Position numbers and translations under genes: made by a program
Shown: positions 7,741-63,927 of the stretch, piece by piece
Layout of the letters: every line of letters begins with the position of its first letter
Position numbering within the stretch: the first letter of the stretch is position 1
Assembly (NCBI RefSeq): GCF_006345805.1
Contig: NC_043001.1
Location: forward strand, 118,606,001 to 118,670,000
Length of the DNA stretch: 64,000 nucleotides
Reading direction: 5' to 3'
DNA from: Octopus sinensis
Lineage: Eukaryota
Notes under the pieces: model-generated
Databases searched by the model: none
The model's input: the letters and a program-made list of their open reading frames with translations, nothing else
Told to the model about the DNA's origin: nothing

Positions 7741-8880
7741 ACCAGGCTGAGTAAAAAGTTAGCAACGTTTTGAAACATGAAATTCATCTCAATGTATTTC
7801 AACAATGCGGAAATTTTATTCATCAAAGTAACTACCATTACAATCAACACATATTTGCCAACGAGTTACAAGTTAGTTTATTCCGGTAACATAAAATCTG
7901 GAGTTCTGGAACTGATGAACTCTTTGAACACACTTTCAGCATCGGTTTGATTTTTGAACTCCTTGTCTCACAGGAAACCATCAAGGTGCTTGAAAAAGTG
8001 GTAGGAGAAAGGTCTGAAGAATAAATTGGGTGGGGAAGAACTTCGTAGCCAAGTTTGCCTCGACTTCTGGAGCGTCATTAGTGAATCGTGTGGTCAAGCA
8101 TTGTCATGAAGAATGATTGGTCCTCTTCCACTGACCAAACGGAGGAGTAGCAATTTTTCGCTTATTTTATCAATTTCATGGCAATATATTTCTGCAGTAA
8201 TGGTTTTTCCAGGTTTTAAGAAGTTATAGTGAATGAGTCCAGCAGAACACCACCAACCAGTCACCTTAACCGTCTTTTTGAAGAGCTTGGGGTTAGGGAA
8301 GGTTTTCGGTGCTTCGTTTTGGTCCAACCACTGCAAAGAAGGCTTTTTTTATTAAAAAAAAAAGAAGAAAAAACGTTTTTTACAGAATGTACAGAATATA
8401 CTTTTCATCGCAAGTTACAATACGGTCGAGAAATGGATCGGTCTGATTACGGAGAAGAAGCGACAAGCAAATTTCATATCTGCGCATTTTCTGATTTTCA
8501 CTCAAATCATGTGATACCCATTTGTCGAGCCTTTTTTTCTTCTTTGATTTTCCGATTACATGCAAATGGTTGCAAGCAGTTTTCTGGCTAACTTGAAGTT
8601 CTTTTGCCAGTTCTCGAGTGGTTTTACGTGGATCTTTCTCAATGACGGTCTTTGATTGACCGTCATTTATGACAAATGGGCGTCCACTACGCTCACGATC
8701 TTCAAGGCTCAGGTCTGTACTGCGAAATCGTTTAAACCATTTTCGAGCTGACCACACACCAAACGTTTCGTGGATTTCGAGGCCAGTTTCAGCTGCTTTA
8801 CGTCCTTTTTTGAAATTGAATAGCAAAATTGCTCGAATATCGCGCTTTAACAGTTCCATTCCAGATGATTGTAACAACGA
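7741..8880 (-). mobile_element. Degenerate mariner (Tc1/mariner, D,D34D-type) DNA transposon, transposase pseudogene 7812-8859
   Basis: Translation gives MELLKRDIRAILLFNFKKG...KWFKRF...LEDRERSGRP...WVSHDL...DRIVTCDEK, then ...IILHDNA*PH... and, after frameshifts, HPIYSSDLSP...HFFKHL...LVTRWQICVDCNGSYFDE*. Multiple stops and frameshifts. A matching 5' TIR was not found. Confidence 0.9.
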
Positions 8881-11800
8881 TTTATTTATTGTCCACAGGG
8901 GATCAAACATAGAGGGACGGTACAAATGAGGGAGGGGCTGATGGTACGTATGGTTTTTACACAGAGATGAAAAATTAAAAATTTATATAGATCGAATGAT
9001 TAACAAAACAAATACACAAGCAATGAAGTGGGGGATGGGTTTTGCTTCGACTCCTCAAGCCCCGTGCCACCACTGTAACCTTTAGTATAACCTTATGGAT
9101 ACACTATGCGGGTTCATTCATTCGCAACAAACTCGCCACAGCATTCCATCTTTTTCTATATACATCAGGTGACAGGCATTTTCTCTTCACCCTTATTTTC
9201 CTCTTAAGGTGGTAGATGAGGTAATGGACTAGTCCAAGGCTGGAGATGAATGTGCCTGTAATGATTCCTTTCACACGGGTCTTCTATACCGCTTCTTTCG
9301 CTATAGCGACAACAGCAAGGAAACAAGCCTTGCCTTTTTTGTTAAAAGAGGCAGGAAGAAAATCTTTACAATCGACTCGGAAGACAGTTGTACTCTTCCC
9401 AGCTGTGACACCGGATGTTCAATATAATCCCGCATCTCAGAGATTTTGGGGTATTGCACACTTGCATGCAGAACGGTTTCCCTGTCCTGCTCGCATCTTG
9501 GGCACGTGGGTGCGCAACGGGCACCATGCATTGTGTGTTTATCGCGAACTGGTAAGGCTCTTCAATAAAACTGCCAGACCAGGGATCCTTGGAAGTTGTC
9601 CCGCATGTCCTTCGAAACAAACCGGCTAGTTGGTCCCCATCGAAGCCTAGAGTCTCCCCCAGGAGGTCGGCACACTGAGCCTCTACTAACCCTCTATAGA
9701 AAGACAAGGTGGAACCCCGCCGCTGGCGTTGCCCGTGAGACAAAGAAGCCTGAGTGCCTCACAACACTCCGCTTGTCAATCATCTAACTTTGGTCTACAT
9801 TTGATCCAAGGTCCTAATTCACTCAAACTAGTAAGCTCAGGAAGTAACGACCGAACGAACGGAGACCACACCTATTCACCGTTAAGGTAGATCCACAGAT
9901 GCCTCAACCTCGGCGCATGTCAGCGCATCAATAGCCAAAGAATCCTTAGTCCACCCTTTAACGGTTGCTGGCAGCAGACAGAGCACTCTACAAGAGGACT
10001 TTTACCCCTCCACAAAAAGCGGAAGAGCAGCCGCTCCAACTTGCACAGAAGCGATAAACACTCCTGCAACCGCCGCCATTCCTTTCAGGAATAGTCACCG
10101 CTCAGACCAGGTCTGAGTTAGGTGGGTCACCCTGCTCGTCACCTCGCTCCAATTCTTCTCTCTCTGGAGGTCTGCACCAAACCAAAGCCCTAGTATTTTA
10201 ACCAGCCCCTCCGTCCAACGCCCTACGACATTGTTTAGAGGTATCGTCTTGCCTCTTCAGGTGCCGGGCTGCAAGCCGACTGACTTATCCTGGTTAACTT
10301 TTGCTCCTGCCACCGCAACCTAGATCGTGTGGGACGCCCCTCAAGCTCTCCAACTTCCGTAGTAAGGGCTCTAGAGCCAACACATACAGAAGGAGGGGGA
10401 GAGGAGACCCTTGACGAACAGAGCGCTTGATGTTGAACGGCTTCGAGAAGAACCCGTTCATCCGAACGATCGAGTCGATTTTGCTGTATAAAGCAATGAT
10501 TCACTCGCGGAAGACGGGGCAGAGCCCGAATTATGCGAGTACCGACACTAGAAACCGATGGTCAACCCTGTCGAAAGCTTTGGACTGGTCTAAATGGACC
10601 AGCATCCTACCCTCGCCAGGAGATCTGTTAACCCTCTCTAAGGTGTAGCGTAGAAGGTGGAGATTGTCGCGTATGGATCTTGCAGGAAAGGCACAAGTTT
10701 GTGCCTCCCCGACGATTCCACCCACGACACGCGCCAACCGTTTTGCATACACCTTGGCCAAAATCTTCAATTTTGTGTTAAGCAGAGTGATGGGCCTGAA
10801 ATTATCTATAATAATCCCCTTGTTTGGGTCCTTTCTAATTAGCGTCACCACTTCTCGGCTCACAGAGCTGTGTATAAACCCGTTCTGTTGCCAGTTGGTG
10901 AAGACGCATTCCAGTAGGTGCCCGAACAAGTCTGGCATACTCTTATAAAGCTTGTAATGGAGACCATGTAGTCCCGGTGACTTGTCCCGTCACAGTCCGA
11001 CAAAGCCTCTTGCACCTTCGCAGCTGTGATCGGCCCCTCACAGCACACCGATTGCTGCTCCGAGAGATGCGGCATGTCAGCGAAGAAGTCCGTGAGGTTC
11101 CTCCTACATTCCAACTCGCAGACCCTCCCATGAAGCAGGGCGAAATGCTCTTGAAAGACCTTACACATCTCTTCGGGTTCTTTTACCAAGTCTCCTTGAT
11201 TATTGATCAAAGACTTTATAGTGCCATTATTGTCACGTTGGGTCTCTATCACAGGGGCCCATCCTACGGCTTTGATTTCTTCCTGTCCCATTGCACGTTG
11301 CTTAGCTCTGACTACGCATCCTTCGCTTTTAGCCTCGAGGTGACGGTTAAGTGCCATTCTCGCAGCAAAATATTCGGCGCGCGAAGCCAGATTCCACTGC
11401 TTCGTCTAGGACCCTATCTGAAGCCCTTTTTACTCTATTTTTCTTAGCCACTAATTCTTTGCTATACTTTATAGACTCAAATTTTATGGCTCTTTTGAGG
11501 GCATACCACCATTTGTTGTTAATAATGGCACCACACAATGCCCTCATCACTAACTGTCTAATCCAACTCCTGTACTCCTCATGAGTCAAAAGCAACTTAT
11601 CGAATTTCCAATAGCCGAATCCCTGTCTACGTATCTAAATCCAGCCTACAGGTCATAAATCTGTGATCAATGTAGCTGATATGGTGAAATTGTGGACGAC
11701 TAACTAGGTTTTTGTCTATTTCCCTAATTAGAATCCTAGATGACCCATCGCTATTAGTCCATGTCCACAACGGAACATCTAGGACATTTAGTCTGTACCT

Positions 11801-13930
11801 ATCTGCCAGATGAAATCTACTGAGCTGATTATTAAAGCACGGGTTTCCTCTTCTATCAGCAGACGAGCCAACGCAATCTGCGCGTGCACCGCATAGTACG
11901 TTAAATTCACCTAATATTACTATGGTGTGAGATGTACCTAGATACTTCTCCAGGCCGCGAAAAAAGTCAGACTGTCTAACTTCCGAGGGAGCGTAGACAG
12001 CTACCAGCCTGAAGACCTTGCTGCTGCTTAGTGTCATTTCGAGGACGACCAACCTACCTTTCGGGTCGATGAAGATAGTTCTTGTCTCTAAATCCAGATT
12101 TTTTCTGAGCAGCACAGCGACACTTCTCCCTCCTCCAGGTAGGCGTGGAGAAATAAATTTCTCGTAGCCATTTAAGAGGGGAAAAAACACCGTCGACTAC
12201 TCAGTCTGTACTCTGTGGCCACCACTACATCCATCCTATGCGACCTGAGATCATTCAGGAAACGACCTTGTTTCCATTCTGCCCCCAAACCACGTACATT
12301 TAAACAGCCAACATAAAGTTGTACTTGCCGGTTAGAGATGGGTTGCACTACTTTCACATTATTCTATCTTTTCGTCCGATGCTTACGAGGTGTCGTTGAC
12401 CTCGCCCTCAAACATTATTGGGGAACAGTTTTTCTTCAGAGGGCCTATGTCATTTTTAAAATGGTTTGCTAACATATTATAGTTAGCCTTGTCTATTTTA
12501 AGTATTGCTCTATTTTGGGTGATTTTTTCCCCTCAAAGTTTTTTATAATGTTGTCTGCATTGGGAACGTTTTTTAATTGTTGCAGTAGAGATTGTTCGTC
12601 GTCACTACTGCAGTGTAATCCATGTCAAGATGAGAGAGGAACATTTTGGTCTGGAGTTTTTGGTGACTGTGTCCTGTTGGTGGCTGTTTTTCGTTTTTTG
12701 TTTTGTTGTAGAGATTGGGTGGGGAAAGTAGTTTCCTTTTTTTTCTGGAAAATATTTCCCACTCTTCTTTGGCTCCTTCCATTTCCACTTGTTTCATTTT
12801 CAGGTGTTTCTTCACTTGTTCTTCTGTTTTCTTTTGTTTTTCCTTTTGTTTTTCGACAGCTGGGGGTAAATGCTGCTTTTTCGGGGACGGGGGTTGCACT
12901 CGGCCCTAACGTGGCCTTTTTGATAACAGTTGTAGCAACGAGGCTTCCTCTTCTCTACCATGACTCGCAGTTTAGTCTCCCCTACCAGTATAATGTTCTA
13001 TAATGTTTTCTAAATCGGCGGGGGCCGCCTGTATGATCATCTCTAGTCCTTGCCCCTGCCAATTTTGCAATTCCAGTGCTGAGGCTTGGAGGATAGTAAT
13101 TTTATCTTCCAAGCCGTTTATGGCTGCCACCAGCGAAGCGGAGTCTACTTCGGGTGGGATGTCTCCTACCTTAATCTTGGAAGTCCGCCTTCGAAGATAA
13201 GTAGGTAGGAGAACCACATCCGCAGTTTTAACGTCTCCGTCGATCTTTGTTTCGCCTTTCCCTCCGAATTAAACAGGACTTCTACTGTGACATACTTCAC
13301 ACCTCTTGTGATATATGCCACATTATTCTAAACTGGACAGAGACACCGCCACACCGCCTCCTTACTCGCGTTGTCTAGTTTTTTTAGCTTTTACAACGAA
13401 CGACTTGTAGATAACTGTACACCTTAGTGCATTATGAATAGTTTCACTGGGAGGGGTGATCACAGTTTCGCTTCCCTCCCTTTTCAACATTCCTTTATAT
13501 TTTCCTAATTCGTCTCTTCCACTGTTTATTGGCCTTTTTGAAACAGTGACTGCTTCTGCAAAATTGCTTCCTTATTTTCCTTGCATGGAATCCTCTGCGG
13601 TTGGCATGTTTCTTAATCCTGTGCTATTTTCTGTGTTTTTGGTATTCTTCCATGGACTTGAACTTGTACCAGGTTCATTCCCAGTTTTCGATTTGATTGG
13701 AGGTTTATCCATGTTTGTGTATATTTTTCACAAAATATAACAATATTTTCCCCCTTCACACAAGGAGGAAAACGTTAACAAAAAACTGCCCCAAGCAGAA
13801 AAGTAAGGTATTTTATAAAAAAAAAAAAACACTAAACAAAAGTTCAATAACGTAATAATCCAACAATGTAAATTCAACAAAATATCCACAAATATTGCAA
13901 ACTTACGCCAAACCTTTCGAACAACGTTTG
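8881..13930 (-). mobile_element. Near-full-length but inactivated Tx1/L1-clade non-LTR retrotransposon (ORF1 CCHC, ORF2 APE-RT-ZnF)
   Basis: ORF1 fragments include YITRGVKYVTVEV...LLPTYL...IKVGDIPPE and the zinc knuckle CYNCYQKGHVRAEC (about 12895-12935). ORF2 APE: CLNVRG, YAPS, GEFN, WTW, YIDH (11627-12357). RT: FRPITLLN...KILAK, LDQSKAFDRV, QGSPL (10350-10940). C-terminal CPRC...ETVLH. 3' UTR ends in aataaataaa at about 8881-8890. Frameshifts and stops throughout; the YADD segment appears deleted near 10320. Confidence 0.9.
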
Positions 13931-14789: not shown

Positions 14790-15710
14790 TTTATTTTGGC
14801 ACTACGGCCATAACACACAGGTGACAGCACAGGACACTACTGTGGGGACATAAAACATAGAACGAACGAATGAAAGATGAATTATAAAATGGAGATGAAA
14901 TGGCTGCATGCTCCCCATTTGCAAGCAGTATCATTCGCTTTTTGTATTAGCGTTATAGTCATTAAATTCTCAACATTTACTTACTTTTTTCACCATGTTA
15001 TGTACGGTGTTAGGTCCTCATAATCTATCACTGGCGGCAAGTCATCGAACTCCACGCGTACTCCCGCTGGGTCTATCTTGTCTCCAAATAATTCTCTCAA
15101 TCCTGCACATCTCTCTTGGTCAATCACAATTGTCTTGGTGATCTCTGGATAATATTCCGTTGTTAACTTCACTCTTACTACCGACTTCATTTTGGTTATT
15201 TTCTCGTCAATTTCCACGTTTTTCGAATATGTCACCATACGCCATTTCTTTTTTGGTTCTTTTTTTTTTTGTTACTTGTTCCTGTATTTCCACTTGACTT
15301 TCTATGTTGATTTCCCTTGTTGCTATTGTTGGAATTTCCTTCTGTGTCTCTTCCTGTTTATTTTCCTTCCTTTTCTTTAGTGGACTCTTTGGCGGTGAGT
15401 CCGCGTTTTCCTTCCTTTTCTTTTTCCTATTTATCACCTTATATTCCTCCCCCACCTTCTCTGGACTTTGCTCATTCACTGGAGTCGCCACTTCGGCATT
15501 TTGCTCCTGCTCGTCACTCTGTTGCTGCTGTTCCTGTTCCCTTTTCTCGTCGTTCTGGGGACACCCTGCTCTCATGTGTCCTCTTACTCCACATTGGTAA
15601 CAGGTTGGAGGTCTTCCCACCACTACTACTCTTAATTTTACTTCCTCCGGCAGTATCACCTCCTCCGTTATTTTGTGCAAGACGATGGTCTAGAAACAGC
15701 GCCTTTTAGC
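14790..15710 (-). mobile_element. Third Tx1/L1-type ORF1 (5'-truncated, intact CCHC knuckle) with no ORF2 following
   Basis: KITEEVILPEEVKLRVVVVGRPPTCYQCGVRGHMRAGCP..., then a frameshift at an A-run (about 15250-15270) into WRMVTYSKNVE...IDQERCAGLRELFGDKIDPAG...PYITW* (stop at 14990). AATAAA lies about 190 nt downstream. Confidence 0.75.
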
Positions 15711-28100: not shown

Positions 28101-28608
28101 ATGTCTCGCTATGATGTAGAGAAGTTCCATCCACCCCCAGACCCTGAACTGATTTGCTGTATCTGCCAGTGTGTACTCGACAATGCAAAAGAAAGCCCAT
28201 GTCGCCATGTCTTCTGTAAAGTGTGCATAGAGCAGTGGCTGGAGGATCACAACAGTTGTCCAACATGTCGTACGTGGTTGAGTAAGCATGACCTTCAGAA
28301 TGTGCTGCCCCTTGTTCAAAACATGATCAATAAATTGGCCATGTACTGTGACTTCCGTAATAATGGCTGTGATGAGAAAATTATACTGGAGATGTATGAT
28401 GCGCACATTCAGAAGTGTGACTTCAAACTATTGCAGTGTCCCTACCCCGGTTGCAATTCAACTGTATTACATAAGGACCTTTCCAAACATATGAATGAAC
28501 TGTGCACTTTCCGGGAGGTAACCTGCAACAGAGGTTGTTATTTAAAAATCCCAATTAATGAAGTACCTGTCCATGACTGCCTTTCTTCTTTAAAGAAAAA
28601 ATCAGAAA
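28101..28608 (+). CDS. RING finger (C3HC4) plus TRAF/SIAH-type zinc finger E3 ubiquitin ligase, RNF151/NRDP1(RNF41)-like N-terminus, coding exon 1
   Basis: ATG at 28101, in an exon whose acceptor (tttttcag) ends at 28000. MSRYDVEKFHPPPDPELICCICQCVLDNAKESPCRHVFCKVCIEQWLEDHNSCPTCR is a C3HC4 RING, followed by C/H clusters (CDFRNNGC...HIQKC, CPYPGC...HMNELC, CNRGC...HDC). Donor GAAA|gtaagt starts at 28609 (phase 1). Confidence 0.88.
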
Positions 28609-29405
28609 GTAAGTGGGTTTTTAAAATTTTTTCTTTTTTTCTTTTTTTCCTCATTTTTCCAAAATATAAAATCAAAGTATGTGCCACCAATTTCATGCTC
28701 ATGTGTCTGAACCTACTTTAAAGCACCTTTTTGTGGTTCTCATATCTTTAGTTTGTCTATCAGGCAACACAGATTCTGCTCCTACTTTCTAGTTAGCTGT
28801 AGGAATGGCATCCTGCTTTGAAAATAAATGTGTCCAATAAAATACAAACCTCATCAATGCTAACATGGAAAAATTAATGTAAAACAGCCGTAACTTATAA
28901 AGATGTATTTAATTAAGGAGTAGAAGGAGCCTGTGGAGAGAGAAAAGTAGTGAAAGCTAATCTCAGGATGCTCATAAAGGATGTTTTCAGGAAATTTATG
29001 AAGGAGTTGACAAGTAGCAAGACTCTGTGCTGGAGCAGATATGTCTGACTCATGCCAACATGTGGGGGGGGGATGTATGCAAAATAATAATGAGAAGGAA
29101 TAAGTTGACAAAAGTAGTAGAATGCTTGAGTGAATTACGTATAGGACTTAGATTTGTCCCATTGTGTTCTGAGTTCAAATTTGTATTGGAAACTTCTTCA
29201 CTCTTCATCCGTCTATTATTGGTTTAAAATTTTGGCTCAAGGCCAGTAATTTCAAGAGAGGGTGTAAGTCAATTACATTGACTCCAGTGATACATATCAT
29301 ATTTATATATAATCATACATATATGCTAGCATGGAAAGCGGACGCTAAATGATGATGATGATGATGATGATATATACATATATATATAATCATATATATA
29401 TATTC

Positions 29406-34601: not shown

Positions 34602-35092
34602 ACACACATCATTATATATATATATATATATACATATATACACACACACACACAGAGTATATATATGTATGTATATGTTTGTGTGTGTGTGTGTGTGTAT
34701 GTTTGTATGACAGGCTTCCATTCAGTTTCTATGCAGTCAGATTGAACTTAATGCCACAGAGTTGCAAAGCAAACTTCTTAGCCAGATCTCCATGGCTGCA
34801 CCTAATTTCATAAGTTACATGTAAATTAATTGATTTTGATTTAAGATTATCTTTTGTAAAAACATTTCATAACTCCTTTCATCTTTTGAACTTTGCCATG
34901 GACCACTGATGATCCCCTTGCACCATGTTGTGTATCATTGTTTTAACCCCACTGCTATTGTTCTTCTTTTCTGAACATGTCTAGTTTATCTTTCAACAAT
35001 TTGAAAAATTTATCCTAAAATCTCTTATCTGGAAAGTATTTCCACATATATATATATATCTAAATTGTTTTTAATTTTTTTTTTTTTTTCAG

Positions 35093-37746
35093 AACAACAG
35101 AAATTAATTGAAGAATATTTGAAGAAAATAAAAGAATTTATTACACTGAATGATACTTTGAAAAGAAAAGTGGAGAACTTACTTCGGAACTTTGATGACA
35201 CAAGTCCTCATTCTGTTGAAGGTGTATCTAATTTATTTTCGTCTTCTTATGAAGATGAAGAAGATAACACTTCAATTAACGTCCTTCGAAGAACAGCCGA
35301 TAATTCGGTCACTAAGTTGTTAGTCATGTGTAATTATCTTGAATTTTACACTGATGCTATCGATCAGATTACAGATGAGATCAACCAACTCCAAGGTGAA
35401 ACCAGTCCTGTAATAAATTCTGGCTCTACATCTACAACTATTGCAGCAGCCACTGCTGAGCCAACACAAAACTCAGAAGATACAACTGAAAGCAGACAAA
35501 ATGTAGCAGCCACTTCAGTAGAACCTGACCTACGTGGCAATAATAGCAGTGAGTCGAGACGATTTAGTAGTACAAGGTTTTCTCAGTCGTCTGAGACCTA
35601 TCTGTCTAATGGTAATCCTGACCAAGATCCTAGTGCCAATGCTGAGTCAGTGTTATCCAACTCAGTTCAGATATATTCTGGAGAGACTGGAAGTGCTACA
35701 ACTGGTCCTGAAGACTATACAGCAACAGATAGAGAGCTTGAGGTTTCCTATGTGGCAGATTCTGAAGAAGGGAATAATTCTTCTGCTGGTTTTAACTACA
35801 ATAATGCAAGTGATGATGATGATCTGTTTGATTGGTATGTAGATGAGGAGGAAGTCACTAGTGATGTTTCTTCTTCAATGCATTCCTCTCTTGTTACTAA
35901 TGTCCCACTGGAATCCACTGCAAATGATGCTACATCTCAACCAGAAAATTTTTTTGATCCAGAATATTGGATTGACACATACTATCCACAATCATCTGAC
36001 AGAGGTAATGAAGTTCGCACACCAGAGAATGGGGTTGAGTTTGATAATGTCAGTGTAAATGCCACTGATGGAGATTCATACACACATCACTCAGAGGAAA
36101 ACTATCTCTCATCTAATTATCTTTCATCGCCTTCTGTAACATCTGTACAGTTTTCCCCTTTGGTCTCATCGTCACCACAACACGAGTCTGATAGTGATAT
36201 GTATGTCTTATTTTCAGATTACAGTGATGATGATGAAGTCAATCATGATATTGAACTGGTATCTGAGAACGAAGTCAGATTCGCCGTGCCGTTAGAGTCT
36301 CATTGTGATAATCCTCATTCAGACGACAGTAGGACTATGAGTGATGATGAGGACGAGGGGGATGATGATGATGATGATGAGGATGACGACGACGACGACG
36401 ATGACAGAAATAATTCGGTTTATCAACTTACTTTCTTGGAAAACCAGAATTCAATACGTGAGGAAAATGATGAAGAAACATCCAGTCCAGCAAATGTGTG
36501 TCTGTTTGATCAGCCTGAAGATTCCAGTACTGTGAGAGTTTCTACCACAAACAATTCAAACCTAGACATCAATGAAGTTAGTATAACACATGTTTACTCT
36601 TCTGATAATAAATTGTCTGCCCCTAATGAAAGACCCGTGAACCGAGTTTCATCCCAGGTGTCACTTTATCAGCAAAGACACCGTTACTATGACTTCAACT
36701 CTGAACCACTTGCTGTCCCCAGTCAACACCATGTCTTACGCTTACTTCAGTCCAATAAAGACTCCATGCGGTTCAGTCAGCATGTGGTGTCAGGTAACAC
36801 TGAGTCTACTCGTCAAACTCCGGGTGTATCTATAAAAATTGAACCTACATTAGATTTCATACGGGTTTCATCCTCGGATTCAGGAAATATTCAAAAATCA
36901 ACCCTGACCACCCGAACAGTGTGTGTACCCCTGCATGACATGAACACTTGCAATTCAGATGATGTAAAAGTAATTAGTGAGAGAGTTGTCCAGGCAGATA
37001 CTACTCTTCAATATCCTTCTTCTCAAAACACATCACGATACAACCAACGCAGGAAAAGGCAAAATTCATCACCTTCTGCTAATAGCTTTCCTTCAAAAGT
37101 CCGCCGTGGGCGTGATCACTCAAACTTTTATCCCCAATCCACCTTTACAACTACCATACGAAATCGTGTTAAGTCTCTAAAAAATGAACAGAACACTTCC
37201 AATCAACATCTTAAACATCATTTTCCCAATCGGCAGCATGCTTCACAAACTACCACTAGCACTGCTGCTTCCAGTGCAAATATTTCTGCTCCTTCAAACA
37301 CTGCTGTTATGTCATCATGTCGACCGAGTTCTCGTTACACTACACTTCACTCTAGTTGGCGAGGAACAGAACCTTGTAACAACAACAGAACAAGATGCAA
37401 TACAAAAAAAACTGCTGCTGCTTGTGAAAGACAAATGACTACACAGACTAATGTCCAAATTAACCAATTAGAAGATAGATCATTGCCTAATGTGAACTCT
37501 ACTGATGGTACTGTGCTCTTTGGCCTGCCACTGCCAGATCAATTACATTCCCACAGATCTGAGCACACTCTTGACCAAACAGATTCAGACAATGCTAGTT
37601 ATGAACCATCAGAGAGCTGCTCTGATTCTGAGGTTCCAGAATCTGACAGTAGTTATGAAGTATTAATACCAAAAACTATTTCTCAATTATTAGATGAATA
37701 TAATTCTGATGAAACGGATGAGAGTTGGTCAGTTGGTATGGACTAA
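35093..37746 (+). CDS. RING/TRAF-ZnF E3 ligase, coding exon 2: coiled coil plus very long acidic Ser/Asp/Glu-rich disordered region
   Basis: Poly-T acceptor ttttcag ends at 35092, and A+AA restores the frame (KKKSEKQQKLIEEYLKKIKE..., a continuous heptad-like helix). 2.65 kb stop-free in AT-rich DNA. TAA at 37744-37746 and AATAAA near 37836. Joined CDS is 3162 nt, 1053 aa. A small additional exon in the 6.5-kb intron cannot be excluded. Confidence 0.8.
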
Positions 37747-57149: not shown

Positions 57150-58232
57150 GAACACACAGCACTTCTAGAGCTGTTTTGCTGAAGTGGGTGGGTTTTCTCA
57201 AGAACCTCATATTGCCAGACATTTTGGTCCATTGTCATCTCCCTGAGGCTCAACATCCTGAGAGTGGTCGTCACCACTTCATCCCATGTCTTCCTTTTCC
57301 ACAGGTGTCATTCATTTCCAGTGATCAGCGATTCTTTAATAAGCTGTCCTCATTCACACAAATCACATGTCCAAACCAACATAGTCTTTTGCACTTTGTC
57401 GTACATGCACACTGATGTTTCACATCCATCAGAGCATACTACCTTCATTCCTCTCGATGCATATCTTCTGCATTCAGAGCCCAGGTCTCACTGCAACATA
57501 CAATCTACCTTTCACTTTGAGTGAGAGAGTCTTTTTGTTGCCAACAGAGGTAATAACTCTCTGAACTTCCTCCATCCTATTTTTATTCTAGAAACAATAC
57601 TTTGAGCATCTCCCACCATTGGTAATTTGGTTGCCTAGGTAACAGAAACTATCTACAACCTCAAGAGAGCCTCCTGGGCATTTGAGAAAGTCTAACCCCT
57701 GTTTGCCCCTAGTGCTTATTGATCCTGCATATCTGCCACATACAAGGACACCTTTATCTGTTAATCTAGCTGTGATTCCACTGTACCTCTTGTGTATCCA
57801 TAGCTTTAACTGGATGCAGCAAATGGAATTACTTCCTACTCCTTTCCTACATATTGTGCAGGGCCATTTACCTGATGGAAATCATCTTATTTGCTTTCTT
57901 GCTAACAACTTTTGTCTTCACTAGGTTAACTTTAAGGTCCTTTGATTCCAGGTTTTGCTTCCATACCCGAAATTTCTTCTCCAATTCTGCTATAGATTCT
58001 GCAATAAGAGTGAGGTCATCAGCATAAAGCAGTTCCCATGGCAATCTAGTTTTGAATTCCTCTGTTATGATCTGAAAGACTGATAAATAAGAGTGGACTG
58101 TGAACTGAGCCCTGTTGGACATCTACTTGCATGCTAAATTCATCACTGTATTCATGGCTATTCTCATCCTACTGAAAGCACCGCTGTACATGGCTTGTGC
58201 TGCTTTGAAAAGCCACTCATTTACCCCTAACT
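57150..58232 (-). mobile_element. RTE-clade LINE fragment (RT and 3' end), degenerate
   Basis: LGVNEWLFKAAQAMYSGA..., VFQIITEEFKTRLPWELLYADDLTLIAESIAELEKKFRVWKQNLESKDLKVNLVKTKV, and 3'-terminal KTWDEVV...MTMDQNVW. Confidence 0.85.
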
Positions 58233-60197: not shown

Positions 60198-61559
60198 TTA
60201 AGATGTTTTCTTTTTACGCTTTTTTTGAACAAGATAATTACCACTTTCAATAAAGTGAGGTCTTGGCCGTTCGTAATTAAACCCAGCGATTTTTTCAATG
60301 TTTTCAGATGTCAGTGGTCGAAGGATAATACCAGTAATGGCACTAATTTGGTTTTCACGAATCGTGAAACGTTGTCCTGATAAGAATACCATCGGTTTTC
60401 TCAGCAAGATCTTTGTTTTTAAAGTATCGCCTGGCATAATCAAAGGTGTATTGTCCGGTAGATACACACAACAAGAAATATTCCAAGTTGCACTGTATAA
60501 CAGTTGGATATACTTGTGGCTAATAGGTTTATTACGTCCTCCTTCAGCTGGAGTAAGAACGTAAATTTGCGCTTCAAACATATCATATTGTTTAAAAGTG
60601 TTAGGCTGAGCCAAAAACATACCTCGTATCACAGCTTCTTGGCGCATACCCCTTAGAAGCGCCCCTGCATTGTCACCGGCTGAACAAGATAAAACTGAAT
60701 TTTTGAAAATTTGTATATCAGATACAACAGATTTTAAAGAAGCACCGTGTCCCAGTATATCAACATTATTACCCTTTTTTAAAATACCTTGCTGGACAGT
60801 TCCGACGGCAACAGTACCCCGTCCTTTAATCGCTACAACCGAATCTACGGGGAAAAGAAACGGTGCTTCTACATTTCGATCAGGAATAATTATATAGTCA
60901 TCCATTGCTGTAATTAAGTTTTTAATGGACTTCTCAAATTGGGACACACCATTCAAAGCCTGAAGAGCCGATCCTAAAACAACGGGTGTGTTTTTCCCAT
61001 CAAAGCCATACTCGTCTAACAATTCCCGAGTCTCTATTTCCACGAGTTCAGCTAATTCAGAATCAACTAAATCAATCTTATTGAGGAAAATAACAATTCT
61101 TTCAATTCCTATTTGTTTTGCTAAAAGGAGATGTTCGCGGGTTTGCGGCATCGTTCCATCCGTGGCAGCAACCACCAAAATAGCTGCATCCATCTGCGAG
61201 GCACCCGTAATCATATTCTTGATGTAATCGACGTGGCCTGGACAGTCTATGTGAGCATAATGTCGACATAAACTTTCATACTGAACGAGAGCTGTGTTGA
61301 TAGTAATTCCGCGCAGTCTTTCCTGGGGTGCGCGATCGATGTCTTCGTAGCAAGTGAACTTCGTCAAACCCTCTTTGGAAAGGACTTTAGTAATAGCAGC
61401 AGTTAAAGTCGTCTTACCGTGGTCTATATGGCCGATCGTACCCACGTTGCAGTGTTCTTTATTCGACAGTTTACTGGAGAATTTTCTGTGAAGATGTCTT
61501 CCTAATTTACGAATCCCTAATAAACCCTTCCTCGCGCAAAGACCGTAAACTAAGGCCAT
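60198..61559 (-). CDS. TUFM: Mitochondrial elongation factor Tu (TUFM family), intronless and divergent; possibly a second (EF-Tu2-like) paralog
   Basis: Uninterrupted 453-aa ORF from ATG at 61559 (the track's 61568 start is a TTG). Arg/Lys/Leu-rich, acid-free N-terminus resembling a mitochondrial presequence. [23 protein letters not shown] and GSAL GTPase motifs. Domain 2 GRGTV; domain 3 EGGR, MPGD and RFTIRE. The symbol denotes the family; orthology to the main TUFM is not established. Confidence 0.93.
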
Positions 61560-61993
61560 TCTTGCCAAGGGTCACCCTTCAACCGACAGCGTCACCTGGT
61601 GGTTCGCACTGCAAGTCCGATAACTCTAAATTACTATCTCCCTGTTGCTGGGGATCGTAACAACAACGATTTCTTAACGATTTTATAATAACAACAATAG
61701 CAATACTAACACAGCGTAGTTCATGGAATACATATGTGAACAGGGTTACGAGGTTACCTTCGCCTACACGGTGCTCTTAAGTACATATAACTAAGAGATT
61801 GACTATGAAATCAAAACAGAGGAAATACAAAAATAAACATGGGTATCACGAAATAACGAAACGAATCTATAAAAAGCTTAAAAATCACTTTTAAGTGCCA
61901 TTAATACAGATTTTTCTTTTTAATTGCTGAACAACCCAGTTGTTTGAAATTATTACACTTGACGATCACTCCCCCCACTCCCGCCTAAACACA

Positions 61994-63261
61994 CATGTAT
62001 GTATGTATGTATGTATGTATGTATGTATGTATGTATGTATGTATGTATGTATGTATGTACGTACGTACGTATGTATGTATGTATGTATGTATGTATGTAT
62101 GTATGTATGTATGCATGTATGTATGTATGCATGTATGTATGCATGTGTGTATGTATGTATGCATGTATGTATGTATGTATGTATGTATGTATGTATGTAT
62201 GTATGTATGTATGTATGTATGTACGTACGTATGTATGTATATATGTATGTATACATGTATGTATGCATGTGTGTATGTATGTATGTATGTATGTATGTAT
62301 GTATGTATGTATGTATGCATGTATGTATGCATGTATGTATGTATGCATGTATGTATGCATGTGTGTATGTATGTATGTATGTATGTATGTATGTATGTAT
62401 GTATGTATGTATGCATGTATGTATGTATGTACGTACGTATGTATGTATGTATGTATGTATGTATGTATGTATGTTTGTATGTGTGTATGTATGTATGTAT
62501 GTATGCATGTATGTATGTATGCATGTATGTATGCATGTGTGTATGTATGTATGTATGTATGTATGTATGTATGTATGTATGCGTGTATGTATGCATGTGT
62601 GTATGTATGTATGTATGTATGTATGTATGTATGTATGTATGCATGTATGTATGTATGCATGTATGTATGCATGTGTGTATGTATGTATGTATGTATGTAT
62701 GTATGTATGCATGTATGTATGTATGTACGTACGTATGTATGTATGTATGTATGTATGTATGTATGTATGCGTGTATGTATGCATGTGTGTATGTATGTAT
62801 GTATGTATGTATGTATGTATGTATGCATGTATATATGTATGTATGTATGTATGTTTGTATGTGTGTATGTATACATGTATGTATGTATGTATGTATGCAT
62901 GTATATATGTATGTGTGTATGTATGTATGCATGTATGTATGTATGTATGTATGTTTGTATGTGTGTATGTATGTATGCATGTATGTATGTATGTATGCAT
63001 GTATATATGTATGTATGTATGCATGTATGTATGTATGTATGTATGTATGTATGTATGTATGCATGTATGTATGTACGTACGTATGTATGTATGTATGTAT
63101 GTATGTATGTATGTATGTATGCGTGTATGTATGTATGTATGTATGTATGTATGTATGCATGTATATATGTATGTATGTATGTATGTATGTACGTACGTAT
63201 GTATGTATGTATGTATGTATGTATGAATGTATGTATGTATGTTTGTATGTATGTATGCATG

Positions 63262-63294
<33 letters not shown>

Positions 63295-63557
63295 GTGTAT
63301 GTATGTACGTACGTATGTATGTATGTATGTATGTATGTATGTATGTATGTATGTATGTATGAATGTATGTATGTATGTTTGTATGTATGTATGTATGCAT
63401 GTATGTATGTATGCATGTATGTATGCATGTGTGTATGTATGTATGCATGTATATATGTATGTATGTATGTATGTTTGTATGTGTGTATGTATGTATGCAT
63501 GTATGTATGTATGTATGTATGCATGTATATATGTATGTGTGTATGTATGTATGCATG

Positions 63558-63591
<34 letters not shown>

Positions 63592-63927
63592 TGTATGTAT
63601 GTATGTAGGTATGTACGTACGTACGTACGTACGTATGTATGTATGTATGTATGTATGTATGTATGTATGTATGAATGTATGTATGTATGTATGTATGTAT
63701 GTATGTATGTATGTATGTATGAATGTATGTATGCATGTATGTATGTATGTATGTTTGTATGTATGTATGTATGTATGTATGTATGTATGTATGTATGTAT
63801 GCATGCATGCATGTATGTATGTATGTATGTATGTATGTATGTATGTATGTATGCATGCATGTATGTATGTATGTATGTATGTATGTATGTATGTATGTAT
63901 GTATGTACGTACGCACGCACGCACGCA
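61994..63927 (+). repeat. About 1.9-kb (TATG)n satellite with interspersed variants (CATG, TACG, TGTG, TTTG, AATG)
   Basis: Direct reading; source of all 400-670-aa MYVC/HTYI pseudo-ORFs. Confidence 0.98.

What the first reader, a model, noticed from the sequence alone, without database searches (positions are those of the whole stretch)
60198..61559. Mitochondrial EF-Tu with a remodelled aminoacyl-binding pocket: candidate EF-Tu2-like specialist paralog in a probable cephalopod
Seen in sequence: all GTPase motifs are intact, but residues lining the amino-acid pocket are changed. The near-invariant His of INTSHVEY (E. coli His66) is Leu (INTALVQY, codon 61287-61289). PIEDVF is PVDSVV, GTVVTG (Thr228) is GTVAVG, and EMFRK is QIFKN. 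The T-stem-facing REGGRTVGAG loop reads [10 protein letters not shown]. Established: nematodes and arthropods have duplicated mitochondrial EF-Tu. In C. elegans, EF-Tu1 serves T-armless tRNAs and EF-Tu2 is restricted to D-armless Ser-tRNAs through pocket substitutions. Inference: this is not the housekeeping TUFM but a second paralog with narrowed amino-acid or tRNA specificity, implying a two-factor mitochondrial elongation system in this lineage.
Basis: partly seen in the sequence, partly recalled or inferred. Interest (0 to 1): 0.75.

Follow-up and report, generated by a model that had tools for sequence, protein, structure and literature searches.

The report
Octopod second mitochondrial EF-Tu (mEFTu2)
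This is an intact, strongly conserved octopod gene for the second mitochondrial elongation factor Tu (the mEFTu2/EF-Tu2 paralog that protostome animals carry beside the ordinary one), a duplication already reported for molluscs, so it is a real but largely ordinary gene with one lineage-specific twist in its amino-acid pocket.

Summary
Window 60198-61559 (minus strand) is one uninterrupted 453-codon ORF encoding a three-domain mitochondrial-type EF-Tu.

The main inference also holds. In a maximum-likelihood tree the protein sits in a 100/99-supported clade with insect mEFTu2 and a 'type-2' EF-Tu found in molluscs, annelids, nemerteans and a bryozoan. The same species, including Octopus vulgaris, also carry a separate canonical-like 'type-1' EF-Tu. 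The gene is under purifying selection (dN/dS about 0.10). Its coding sequence is a single exon in three cephalopod genomes, and it carries a conserved basic C-terminal extension.

Two corrections are needed:
- Most of the 'pocket remodelling' (Thr228 to Val, EMF to QIF, REGGRT to REN..T) is a signature of the whole type-2 family. Only His66 to Leu is specific to cephalopods.
- His66 is missing from every lophotrochozoan type-1 protein sampled (0/46; Cys in Octopus vulgaris). The suggested test, 'a second TUFM retaining His66', would therefore fail.

Atkinson (2015) already reported both duplicates in Mollusca. Narrowed specificity remains an untested inference. Novelty is low: this is a new member of a known kind.

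The parts
60198..61559 (-). Complete single-exon coding sequence (453 codons plus TAA stop at 60198-60200) of the type-2 mitochondrial EF-Tu (mEFTu2 ortholog)
   Evidence: ORF listing, sequence, Pfam three-domain hit, PDB hits to mt EF-Tu at E about 1e-139, tree placement
61470..61559 (-). N-terminal presequence-like region (residues 1-30; nine Arg/Lys/His, no acidic residue), presumed mitochondrial targeting peptide
   Evidence: Read from the translation. Not alignable among cephalopods. pLDDT below 50 for residues 1-29. Targeting itself is inferred, not tested.
60891..61460 (-). GTPase domain (residues 34-223) with intact G1-G5 motifs ([26 protein letters not shown])
   Evidence: Pfam GTP_EFTU residues 34-223; invariant columns in alignment A1
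61287..61289 (-). Leu91 codon (ctc) at the position of E. coli His66; cephalopod-specific substitution within type 2
   Evidence: Sequence. Column counts: cephalopod type-2 Leu 5/5, other lophotrochozoan type-2 His 20/22, insect type-2 His 13/13. Wider count.
60609..60857 (-). Domain 2 (residues 235-317) holding the aminoacyl/A76 pocket: D239, S240, V242 (E. coli E215, D216, F218), V252 (T228), Q283-I284-F285 (E259-M260-F261), N297 (N273)
   Evidence: Pfam D2; model strands; motif tables. The mapping to E. coli numbers rests on the motifs PIEDVF, GRGTVVTG, EMFRK and AGENVG, recalled from general knowledge.
60804..60806 (-). Val252 codon (gtc) at the position of E. coli Thr228; Val or Ile here is a type-2 family signature
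   Evidence: Sequence. GRGTV[AV][VI]G occurs in lophotrochozoan and insect type-2, against GRGTVV[TS]G in canonical proteins.
60315..60593 (-). Domain 3 (residues 323-415), including the R401-E402-N403 loop (type-2 signature RE-N against canonical animal RD-G)
   Evidence: Pfam D3; signature columns 402 and 403
60201..60314 (-). C-terminal extension (residues 416-453: ..[30 protein letters not shown]), conserved among cephalopods and recognisable in other lophotrochozoan type-2 proteins; basic tail
   Evidence: C-terminal comparison; predicted helix 440-452 at pLDDT about 76

Best explanation
The ORF is the octopod ortholog of the protostome 'second' mitochondrial elongation factor Tu, called mEFTu2 in flies and EF-Tu2 in nematodes. 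It is nuclear-encoded, has a single-exon coding sequence, and starts with a basic presequence for import.

It keeps everything an EF-Tu needs to bind GTP, hydrolyse it on the ribosome and adopt the GTP-form three-domain fold. It most likely works as a true translation factor inside mitochondria, beside the type-1 EF-Tu.

What sets it apart is the aminoacyl-tRNA interface:
- Thr228 is replaced by Val, which makes the pocket floor bulkier and apolar.
- Residues 215-218 are altered (D-S-V-V).
- The EMF motif at the 3'-end site reads QIF.
- The domain-3 loop reads REN rather than RDG.
- A conserved basic C-terminal extension of about 38 residues is present.
- In cephalopods only, His66 is replaced by Leu.

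By analogy with fly EF-Tu2 (prefers small aminoacyl groups) and nematode EF-Tu2 (Ser-tRNA only; its C-terminal extension contacts the tRNA), it probably carries only a subset of mitochondrial aminoacyl-tRNAs, with the rest left to type 1.

Shown here: identity, paralogy, coexistence with type 1 in Octopus, purifying selection, and which residues differ. Inferred: import into mitochondria, restricted substrate range, and a tRNA-binding role for the tail.
For: - Domain architecture and intact motifs.
- AlphaFold model at pLDDT 87.7 that superposes on GTP-form EF-Tu, the Phe-tRNA ternary complex 1TTT and human mitoribosome-bound mtEF-Tu 7A5G (TM 0.91-0.95 normalised by target, rmsd 1.7-2.1 A).
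- Careful ML tree (LG+C20 PMSF, 66 sequences): the type-2 clade, comprising insect proteins (including Musca 'mitochondrial translation elongation factor Tu 2') and lophotrochozoan proteins, has support 100/99. The window protein sits inside a 100/100 cephalopod clade (the quick tree agrees).
- AU tests: holding all lophotrochozoan sequences together is rejected (p 0.0018, delta lnL 75.7). A single protostome-stem duplication is not rejected (p 0.465).
- At least 13 lophotrochozoan species have both types, including Octopus vulgaris P0265.
- Type-2 signature states are present at 4 of 5 strict diagnostic columns, plus Thr228 to Val and E259 to Q.
- dN/dS is 0.10 against Argonauta (dS about 1.0) and 0.09-0.12 among three other cephalopods. 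Synonymous sites are saturated between the two groups.
- The coding sequence is a single intact exon in three cephalopod genomes.
- The C-terminal extension is conserved.
- Literature: functional properties of EF-Tu2 in nematodes (PMC4013460, PMC1636415, PMC12221289). Duplicates reported in Annelida, Mollusca and Arthropoda (PMC4342817).
Against: - No biochemical or expression data for any lophotrochozoan type-2 protein was found. Specificity is extrapolated from ecdysozoans.
- No nematode EF-Tu2 sequence could be placed in my tree. The link to the founding members rests on the literature and on insect mEFTu2.
- mt-tRNA-Ser1 is annotated as cloverleaf in almost all cephalopods (PMC11571959), so the nematode rationale of a D-armless Ser-tRNA does not carry over simply.
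- In lophotrochozoans the type-1 protein lacks His66 and has an unusual G[YF]G loop, while type 2 usually keeps His66. Which paralog is the 'generalist' in this superphylum is therefore open.
- The type-1 gene was shown in Octopus vulgaris, not demonstrably in the genome this window comes from.
- Long type-2 stems (0.3-0.6 changes per site) leave some room for long-branch attraction.
Confidence: 0.62

Rival explanations
1. Roles are divided differently in lophotrochozoans. Type 2, which usually keeps the pocket His, may be a broad or even the main carrier, with type 1 (His66 lost, G[YF]G loop, Lys/Glu-rich tail) the modified one. Alternatively, the two split the tRNA pool by amino-acid class rather than into 'general versus Ser/small'. 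In cephalopods His66 to Leu would then re-tune a broad-range factor.
For: - His66 is absent from 0/46 lophotrochozoan type-1 proteins but present in 86/93 type-2 proteins.
- Type 1 also carries lineage-specific changes in the domain-3 loop and a long charged tail.
- Cephalopod tRNA-Ser1 is cloverleaf (PMC11571959).
- Both genes are retained across molluscs, annelids, nemerteans and a bryozoan.
Against: - Type 2 shares Thr228 to Val/Ile, E259 to Q and the REN loop with fly EF-Tu2, which is reported to exclude bulky aminoacyl groups (title and abstract of Sato 2017, recalled; the paper is not held).
- Type 2 evolves faster than type 1 in the tree, as expected of the more specialised copy.
Confidence: 0.25
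2. It is the only, housekeeping mitochondrial EF-Tu of this animal, simply fast-evolving.
For: NCBI names relatives 'elongation factor Tu, mitochondrial-like'. The type-1 gene was not looked for in this very genome.
Against: - Octopus vulgaris has a distinct type-1 protein, P0265, only 50% identical.
- At least 13 lophotrochozoan species have both types.
- The tree separates the two types with 100/99 support.
Confidence: 0.03
3. It is a processed retrocopy or pseudogene of TUFM with no function; the intronless ORF is a remnant.
For: The coding sequence is a single exon, it sits among transposon debris with a reverse-transcriptase fragment 2 kb away, and there are A-rich tracts downstream.
Against: - The frame is intact, and intact single-exon orthologs are present in Argonauta and in another cephalopod genome.
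- dN/dS is about 0.1 with dS about 1.
- It is not a copy of octopus type 1 (50% identity).
- Single-exon coding sequences are also found for both paralogs in Haliotis, so lack of introns is old.
- No poly(A) tail directly follows the 3' region.
Confidence: 0.02
4. It has left translation for another job, for example a chaperone-like or signalling role as proposed for mammalian TUFM, and keeps the fold only.
For: None directly. Paralogs of translation GTPases do sometimes take on new functions.
Against: All residues needed for GTP binding and ribosome-triggered hydrolysis (P-loop, DCPGH with the catalytic His, NKxD, SAL) are invariant across the family. The aminoacyl pocket Asn273 and Phe261 are kept.
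Confidence: 0.05

Closest known systems
Insect mEFTu2 (Drosophila melanogaster CG12736-type; here Musca autumnalis 'mitochondrial translation elongation factor Tu 2', P0097, and Drosophila orthologs P0091/P0093)
   Same: - Same clade, at 100/99 support.
- Same size class, about 450-460 aa.
- Same signature residues: GRGTV.VG (Thr228 to Val), DIQIF (G257D, E259Q, M260I) and the FTIREN loop.
- Coexists with a canonical-like type 1.
   Different: - About 51-55% identity.
- Insects keep His66 and Phe218 (PIDNAF); the octopod has Leu and Val.
- The insect C-terminal extension is shorter (about 20 aa..LPKNKLSK..) and unrelated in sequence to the lophotrochozoan GFNYERPR...KKRKKK tail.
Nematode mitochondrial EF-Tu2 (C. 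elegans tufm-2, Trichinella, Romanomermis), the Ser-tRNA-specific factor
   Same: A second mt EF-Tu with altered aminoacyl-pocket residues and a short C-terminal extension that is needed for tRNA binding (PMC4013460, PMC1636415, PMC12221289). Reported to belong to the same protostome duplication (PMC4342817).
   Different: - No nematode sequence was compared here.
- Strict Ser specificity and dependence on D-armless tRNA are nematode properties.
- Cephalopod tRNA-Ser1 is reported as cloverleaf.
Lophotrochozoan type-2 EF-Tu of gastropods, chitons, bivalves, annelids and nemerteans (for example Littorina P0009, Haliotis P0016, Patella P0300, Capitella P0034)
   Same: Direct orthologs at 55-63% identity, with the same signature residues and the same C-terminal motif PGFN[YF]ERPR..IE.N..L..K.R.KK.
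   Different: - They keep His66 (20/22), whereas cephalopods have Leu.
- Cephalopods sit on a long stem (0.62 changes per site).
- Cephalopods also show Pro to Lys before GRG and Thr to Leu at the end of domain 3.
Canonical mitochondrial EF-Tu (human or bovine TUFM; Octopus vulgaris type-1 P0265)
   Same: Same fold and GTPase machinery. 50-52% identity over about 385 residues.
   Different: Canonical proteins have GTVV[TS]G, GIEMF and the RDG loop, and in deuterostomes no long tail. Octopus type 1 has Cys at His66 and an RASG..GFG loop.

Membership tests
EF-Tu (translational GTPase, EF1 family) | GTP_EFTU + D2 + D3 architecture with intact G1-G5 motifs and the catalytic His of DxxGH | tested here: met
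   Pfam hits, PDB sequence hits, invariant columns, and a model matching GTP-form EF-Tu at TM 0.92-0.95
Protostome mEFTu2 / EF-Tu2 | Phylogenetic placement with named mEFTu2 and apart from type-1/canonical mt EF-Tu | tested here: met
   The clade has 100/99 support in the careful tree. The alternative 'all lophotrochozoan copies form one clade' is rejected, p-AU 0.0018.
Protostome mEFTu2 / EF-Tu2 | Coexistence with a separate type-1 mt EF-Tu in the same lineage | tested here: met
   Octopus vulgaris P0265, plus 12 other species with both types. Not checked in the window's own genome, because no tool searches it.
Protostome mEFTu2 / EF-Tu2 | Family signature residues (Thr228 to Val/Ile; G257D; E259Q/H; RE-N domain-3 loop; Val at window position 289) | tested here: met
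   4 of 5 strict diagnostic columns, plus Val252 and Gln283. The fifth column (window position 244, Val versus Ile) shows the canonical state in 4 of 5 cephalopods.
Protostome mEFTu2 / EF-Tu2 | Orthology with the founding nematode EF-Tu2 proteins | not tested
   No nematode sequence was retrieved; the representative search carries no names. This rests on Atkinson 2015.
Protostome mEFTu2 / EF-Tu2 | Restricted aminoacyl-tRNA range (Ser only in nematodes; small residues in Drosophila) | not testable with these tools
   Needs binding or deacylation-protection assays
Protostome mEFTu2 / EF-Tu2 | C-terminal extension beyond domain 3 that contributes to tRNA binding | tested here: inconclusive
   A conserved basic extension of about 38 residues exists. 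Its sequence is unrelated to the insect tail, and its function cannot be tested here.
Nuclear-encoded mitochondrial protein | Cleavable N-terminal targeting presequence and mitochondrial location | tested here: inconclusive
   The first 30 residues are basic, lack acidic residues, are unconserved and are predicted disordered. No targeting predictor or localisation data were available.
Processed pseudogene / recent retrocopy | Disabled or neutrally evolving frame, lineage-restricted, poly(A) remnant and target-site duplications | tested here: not met
   The frame is intact, dN/dS is about 0.1, and single-exon orthologs occur in at least three cephalopod genomes. No poly(A) tract abuts the 3' end.

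The most novel reading that the evidence does not exclude
Cephalopod mitochondria may run translation with no EF-Tu that carries the aminoacyl-pocket histidine (E. coli His66). Every lophotrochozoan type-1 protein sampled lacks it (0/46), and cephalopods alone have also replaced it with Leu in type 2, conserved in 5/5 species under purifying selection.

If this His-to-Leu change followed a shift in the division of labour between the two factors, cephalopods would be a natural experiment. One such shift would be type 2 taking on hydrophobic or bulkier aminoacyl-tRNAs once tRNA-Ser1 regained a cloverleaf. They would show how EF-Tu's thermodynamic compensation for the esterified amino acid can be rebuilt without His66.
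Probability: 0.2. Interest if true: 0.55.

Novelty: new member of a known kind. Interest (0 to 1): 0.3.

Why it matters
It adds cephalopods to the animals with two mitochondrial EF-Tus. It also gives an independent, model-based confirmation that the duplication is shared by insects and lophotrochozoans and is compatible with an origin in the protostome stem.

Practically, it warns annotators that 'elongation factor Tu, mitochondrial-like' and 'uncharacterized protein' entries in molluscs hide two distinct orthogroups.

The one point that may be new is the distribution of the pocket histidine. It is lost from all lophotrochozoan type-1 proteins sampled, kept in most type-2 proteins, and lost from both in cephalopods. 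No lophotrochozoan EF-Tu has been characterised biochemically as far as my searches show, so this gives a concrete hypothesis for how the two factors share aminoacyl-tRNAs outside nematodes and flies.

Tried and rejected
- Searching for a molluscan canonical EF-Tu with the Saccoglossus protein returned only deuterostomes. The seed that worked was an unnamed canonical-type hit, P0114, which proved to be leech-like.
- The exhaustive representative search and the cluster look-up gave no named nematode or chelicerate EF-Tu2, so those could not be added to the tree.
- The gene position of Octopus vulgaris type-1 P0265 is not on record, so its intron structure is unknown.
- Sato 2017 (Drosophila EF-Tu2) and Suematsu 2005 are not held. 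What I say about them comes from citing papers and from memory of the abstract.
- The Logan contigs for P0004 and P0005 look like transcripts but show no clean poly(A) end, so I do not count them as proof of expression.
- The retrogene idea was considered because the ORF is intronless and sits among transposon debris. I rejected it on conservation, on dN/dS, and because single-exon coding sequences occur for both paralogs in Haliotis.
- A screen for cephalopod-only changes at otherwise conserved columns found little: Pro245Lys and Thr413Leu. His66Leu did not pass that screen, because the lophotrochozoan type-1 proteins also lack His there. So there is no wholesale remodelling particular to cephalopods.

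Full report
**What is in the sequence**

Window 60198-61568 (minus strand) is one uninterrupted ORF. The first ATG is at 61559 and gives 453 residues. A TGA lies four codons upstream of the alternative TTG start, and the cephalopod orthologs also begin with 'MA'.

Pfam finds the three EF-Tu domains: GTP_EFTU 1.6e-58, D2 and D3. The best solved relatives are human and bovine mitochondrial EF-Tu, E about 1e-139 and about 52% identity. The G motifs [22 protein letters not shown] and GSAL are intact, and they are invariant across a 48-sequence family alignment.

- INTALVQY, with Leu91 encoded by ctc at 61289-61287
- PVDSVV
- GTVAVG, with Val252 encoded by gtc at 60806-60804
- QIFKN
- [10 protein letters not shown]

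The nearest relatives are Argonauta hians (84%) and a partial Octopus bimaculoides entry (89%), so the window comes from an octopod.

**Which family it belongs to**

The first homology search gave cephalopods first. Next came gastropods, a chiton, bivalves, annelids, nemerteans and a bryozoan at 53-63% identity. After those came insect proteins of about 452-460 residues, including Musca 'mitochondrial translation elongation factor Tu 2'.

- GRGTV[AV][VI]G instead of GRGTVV[TS]G (E. coli Thr228 replaced by Val or Ile)
- D-[IL]-[QH]-[IV]-F instead of G-I-E-M-F
- FTIRE-N instead of FTLRD-G

A third search was seeded with an unnamed canonical-type hit that proved to be leech-like. It showed that the same species also carry a canonical-like 'type-1' protein. 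These include Batillaria, Nucella, Haliotis, Gigantopelta, Liolophura, Bulinus, Physella, Candidula, Capitella, Owenia, Tubulanus, Watersipora and, decisively, Octopus vulgaris (P0265, 461 aa). P0265 is 50% identical to the window protein.

**Phylogeny**

I built a careful ML tree (LG+C20 PMSF, 66 sequences, four bacterial outgroups).
- The window protein lies in a 100/100 cephalopod clade.
- That clade lies inside a 100/98 lophotrochozoan type-2 clade.
- The lophotrochozoan clade joins insect mEFTu2-type proteins at 100/99.
- Octopus P0265 lies in the lophotrochozoan type-1 clade (100/96), with arthropod type 1 and next to deuterostome TUFM.

An AU test rejects a tree in which all lophotrochozoan copies form one clade, which would mean an independent duplication (delta lnL 75.7, p 0.0018). 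A single clade of all protostome copies is not rejected (p 0.465). The simplest reading is one duplication in the protostome stem, or earlier.

Two caveats apply. The type-2 stems are long, so some long-branch pull cannot be excluded. No nematode EF-Tu2 could be added, because the representative search has no names.

This result is not new. [quoted passage not shown] The EF-Tu-specialist literature still speaks only of nematodes and arthropods.

**Is it a working gene?**

- dN/dS is 0.10 against Argonauta (dS about 1.0) and 0.09-0.12 among three other cephalopods. Synonymous sites are saturated between the two groups.
- The coding sequence is a single intact exon in the window, in Argonauta (L001) and in a third cephalopod genome (L003).
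- Lack of introns is not a sign of a recent retrocopy. In Haliotis asinina both paralogs have single-exon coding sequences, and Littorina type 2 has one intron.
- The AlphaFold model (pLDDT 87.7, pTM 0.81) is a GTP-form EF-Tu. It matches 1EXM, the Phe-tRNA ternary complex 1TTT and human mitoribosome-bound mtEF-Tu 7A5G (TM 0.91-0.95 by target, rmsd 1.7-2.1 A).
- In the model, residues 1-29 (the presequence) are disordered, and a moderately confident C-terminal helix spans 440-452.

**What is particular to cephalopods**

The His66 position gives an unexpected pattern:

| Group | Residue at the His66 position |
|---|---|
| Cephalopod type 2 | Leu 5/5 |
| Other type 2 | His 86/88 (Tyr in a chiton, Asn in Owenia) |
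| Ecdysozoan type 1 and deuterostome TUFM | His 141/144 |
| Lophotrochozoan type 1 (recognised by a G[YF]G domain-3 loop) | His 0/46 (Thr 24, Val 7, Cys 7, Leu 5, others 3; Cys in Octopus vulgaris) |

So loss of His66 is not a mark of EF-Tu2. In this superphylum it marks type 1, and cephalopods have lost it from both factors.

Other cephalopod-only changes at otherwise conserved columns are few: Pro245Lys and Thr413Leu.

Lophotrochozoan type-2 proteins also share a C-terminal extension, PGFN[YF]ERPR..IE.N..L..K.R.KK. It is nearly invariant in cephalopods and ends in KKRKKK. It is unrelated in sequence to the shorter insect tail and to the Lys/Glu-rich tail of protostome type 1.

**How it most likely works**

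Shown here: it is an intact translational GTPase of the type-2 family, it coexists with type 1 in Octopus, and it is under constraint.

Inferred: it is imported into mitochondria. The evidence is a basic N-terminus without acidic residues; no predictor was available. There it forms ternary complexes with only part of the aminoacyl-tRNA pool.

The basis for restricted range is as follows:
- The pocket floor residue Thr228 is Val.
- Positions 215-218 read D-S-V-V.
- The A76/ester region reads Q-I-F-K.
- The domain-3 loop differs from the canonical form.
- In nematodes EF-Tu2 accepts only Ser-tRNA and needs its C-terminal extension (PMC4013460, PMC1636415, PMC12221289).
- Fly EF-Tu2 is reported to prefer small aminoacyl groups (Sato 2017, known to me from its abstract; the paper is not held).

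Against a simple transfer of the nematode model, mt-tRNA-Ser1 is reported as cloverleaf in almost all cephalopods, although molluscan tRNA-Ser2 commonly lacks the D-arm (PMC11571959). In addition, type 1 is itself modified in lophotrochozoans. A different division of labour is therefore a live rival, which I put at about 0.25.

**Verdict**

The paralog and two-factor inference is correct, but it was reached partly on a misleading residue. The gene belongs to a family whose presence in molluscs was already published. I file it as a new member of a known kind, interest 0.3. The distribution of His66 between the two paralogs is the one point that might deserve a specialist's attention.

Noticed in passing
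Proteins P0234-P0299 (type-1 EF-Tu of molluscs, annelids, nemerteans, bryozoan); Octopus vulgaris P0265: All lophotrochozoan type-1 (canonical-like) mitochondrial EF-Tus lack the pocket histidine (0/46; Thr, Val, Cys, Leu and others). They also carry a G[YF]G motif in the domain-3 loop and a Lys/Glu-rich C-terminal tail. Cephalopods therefore have no mt EF-Tu with His66.
   Followed up: partly
P0007 (Octopus bimaculoides, 'elongation factor Tu, mitochondrial-like, partial', 318 aa): This entry lacks the P-loop region. It has DCPGH changed to DCLGH, KNMITG changed to KHMITG, an 8-residue deletion and an aberrant C-terminus. It is either a decayed extra copy or a faulty gene model.
   Followed up: no
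window 61995-63911: An (ATGT)n microsatellite of about 1.9 kb (479 copies, 90% matches) begins about 430 bp upstream of the EF-Tu start codon. It produces the long spurious ORFs listed in all frames.
   Followed up: partly
window 57868-58122 (-), 8380-8925 (-), 11627-12190 (-), 15207-15680 (-): Transposon debris: a reverse-transcriptase fragment (RVT_1) 2 kb downstream of the gene, a Mos1/mariner HTH fragment, a weak endonuclease/exonuclease/phosphatase match and a zinc-knuckle ORF.
   Followed up: partly
window 28101-28721 (+) and 35065-37746 (+): One ORF or exon encodes a RING finger plus TRAF-type/Sina zinc finger, a likely E3 ubiquitin ligase. An 893-residue acidic, Ser/Asp-rich ORF lies 6 kb further on and has no Pfam family. 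They may be parts of one gene.
   Followed up: no
L004 and L005 (Haliotis asinina), L002 (Littorina saxatilis): Both EF-Tu paralogs have single-exon coding sequences in Haliotis. Littorina type 2 has one intron near codon 378. In both gastropods type 2 has the same divergently oriented upstream neighbour, a zf-CCCH/Torus/zf-CHY protein.
   Followed up: partly
P0017 (Owenia fusiformis, 688 aa): The type-2 EF-Tu model is fused at its C-terminus to an unrelated domain (PF00811). This is probably an annotation merger of two genes.
   Followed up: no
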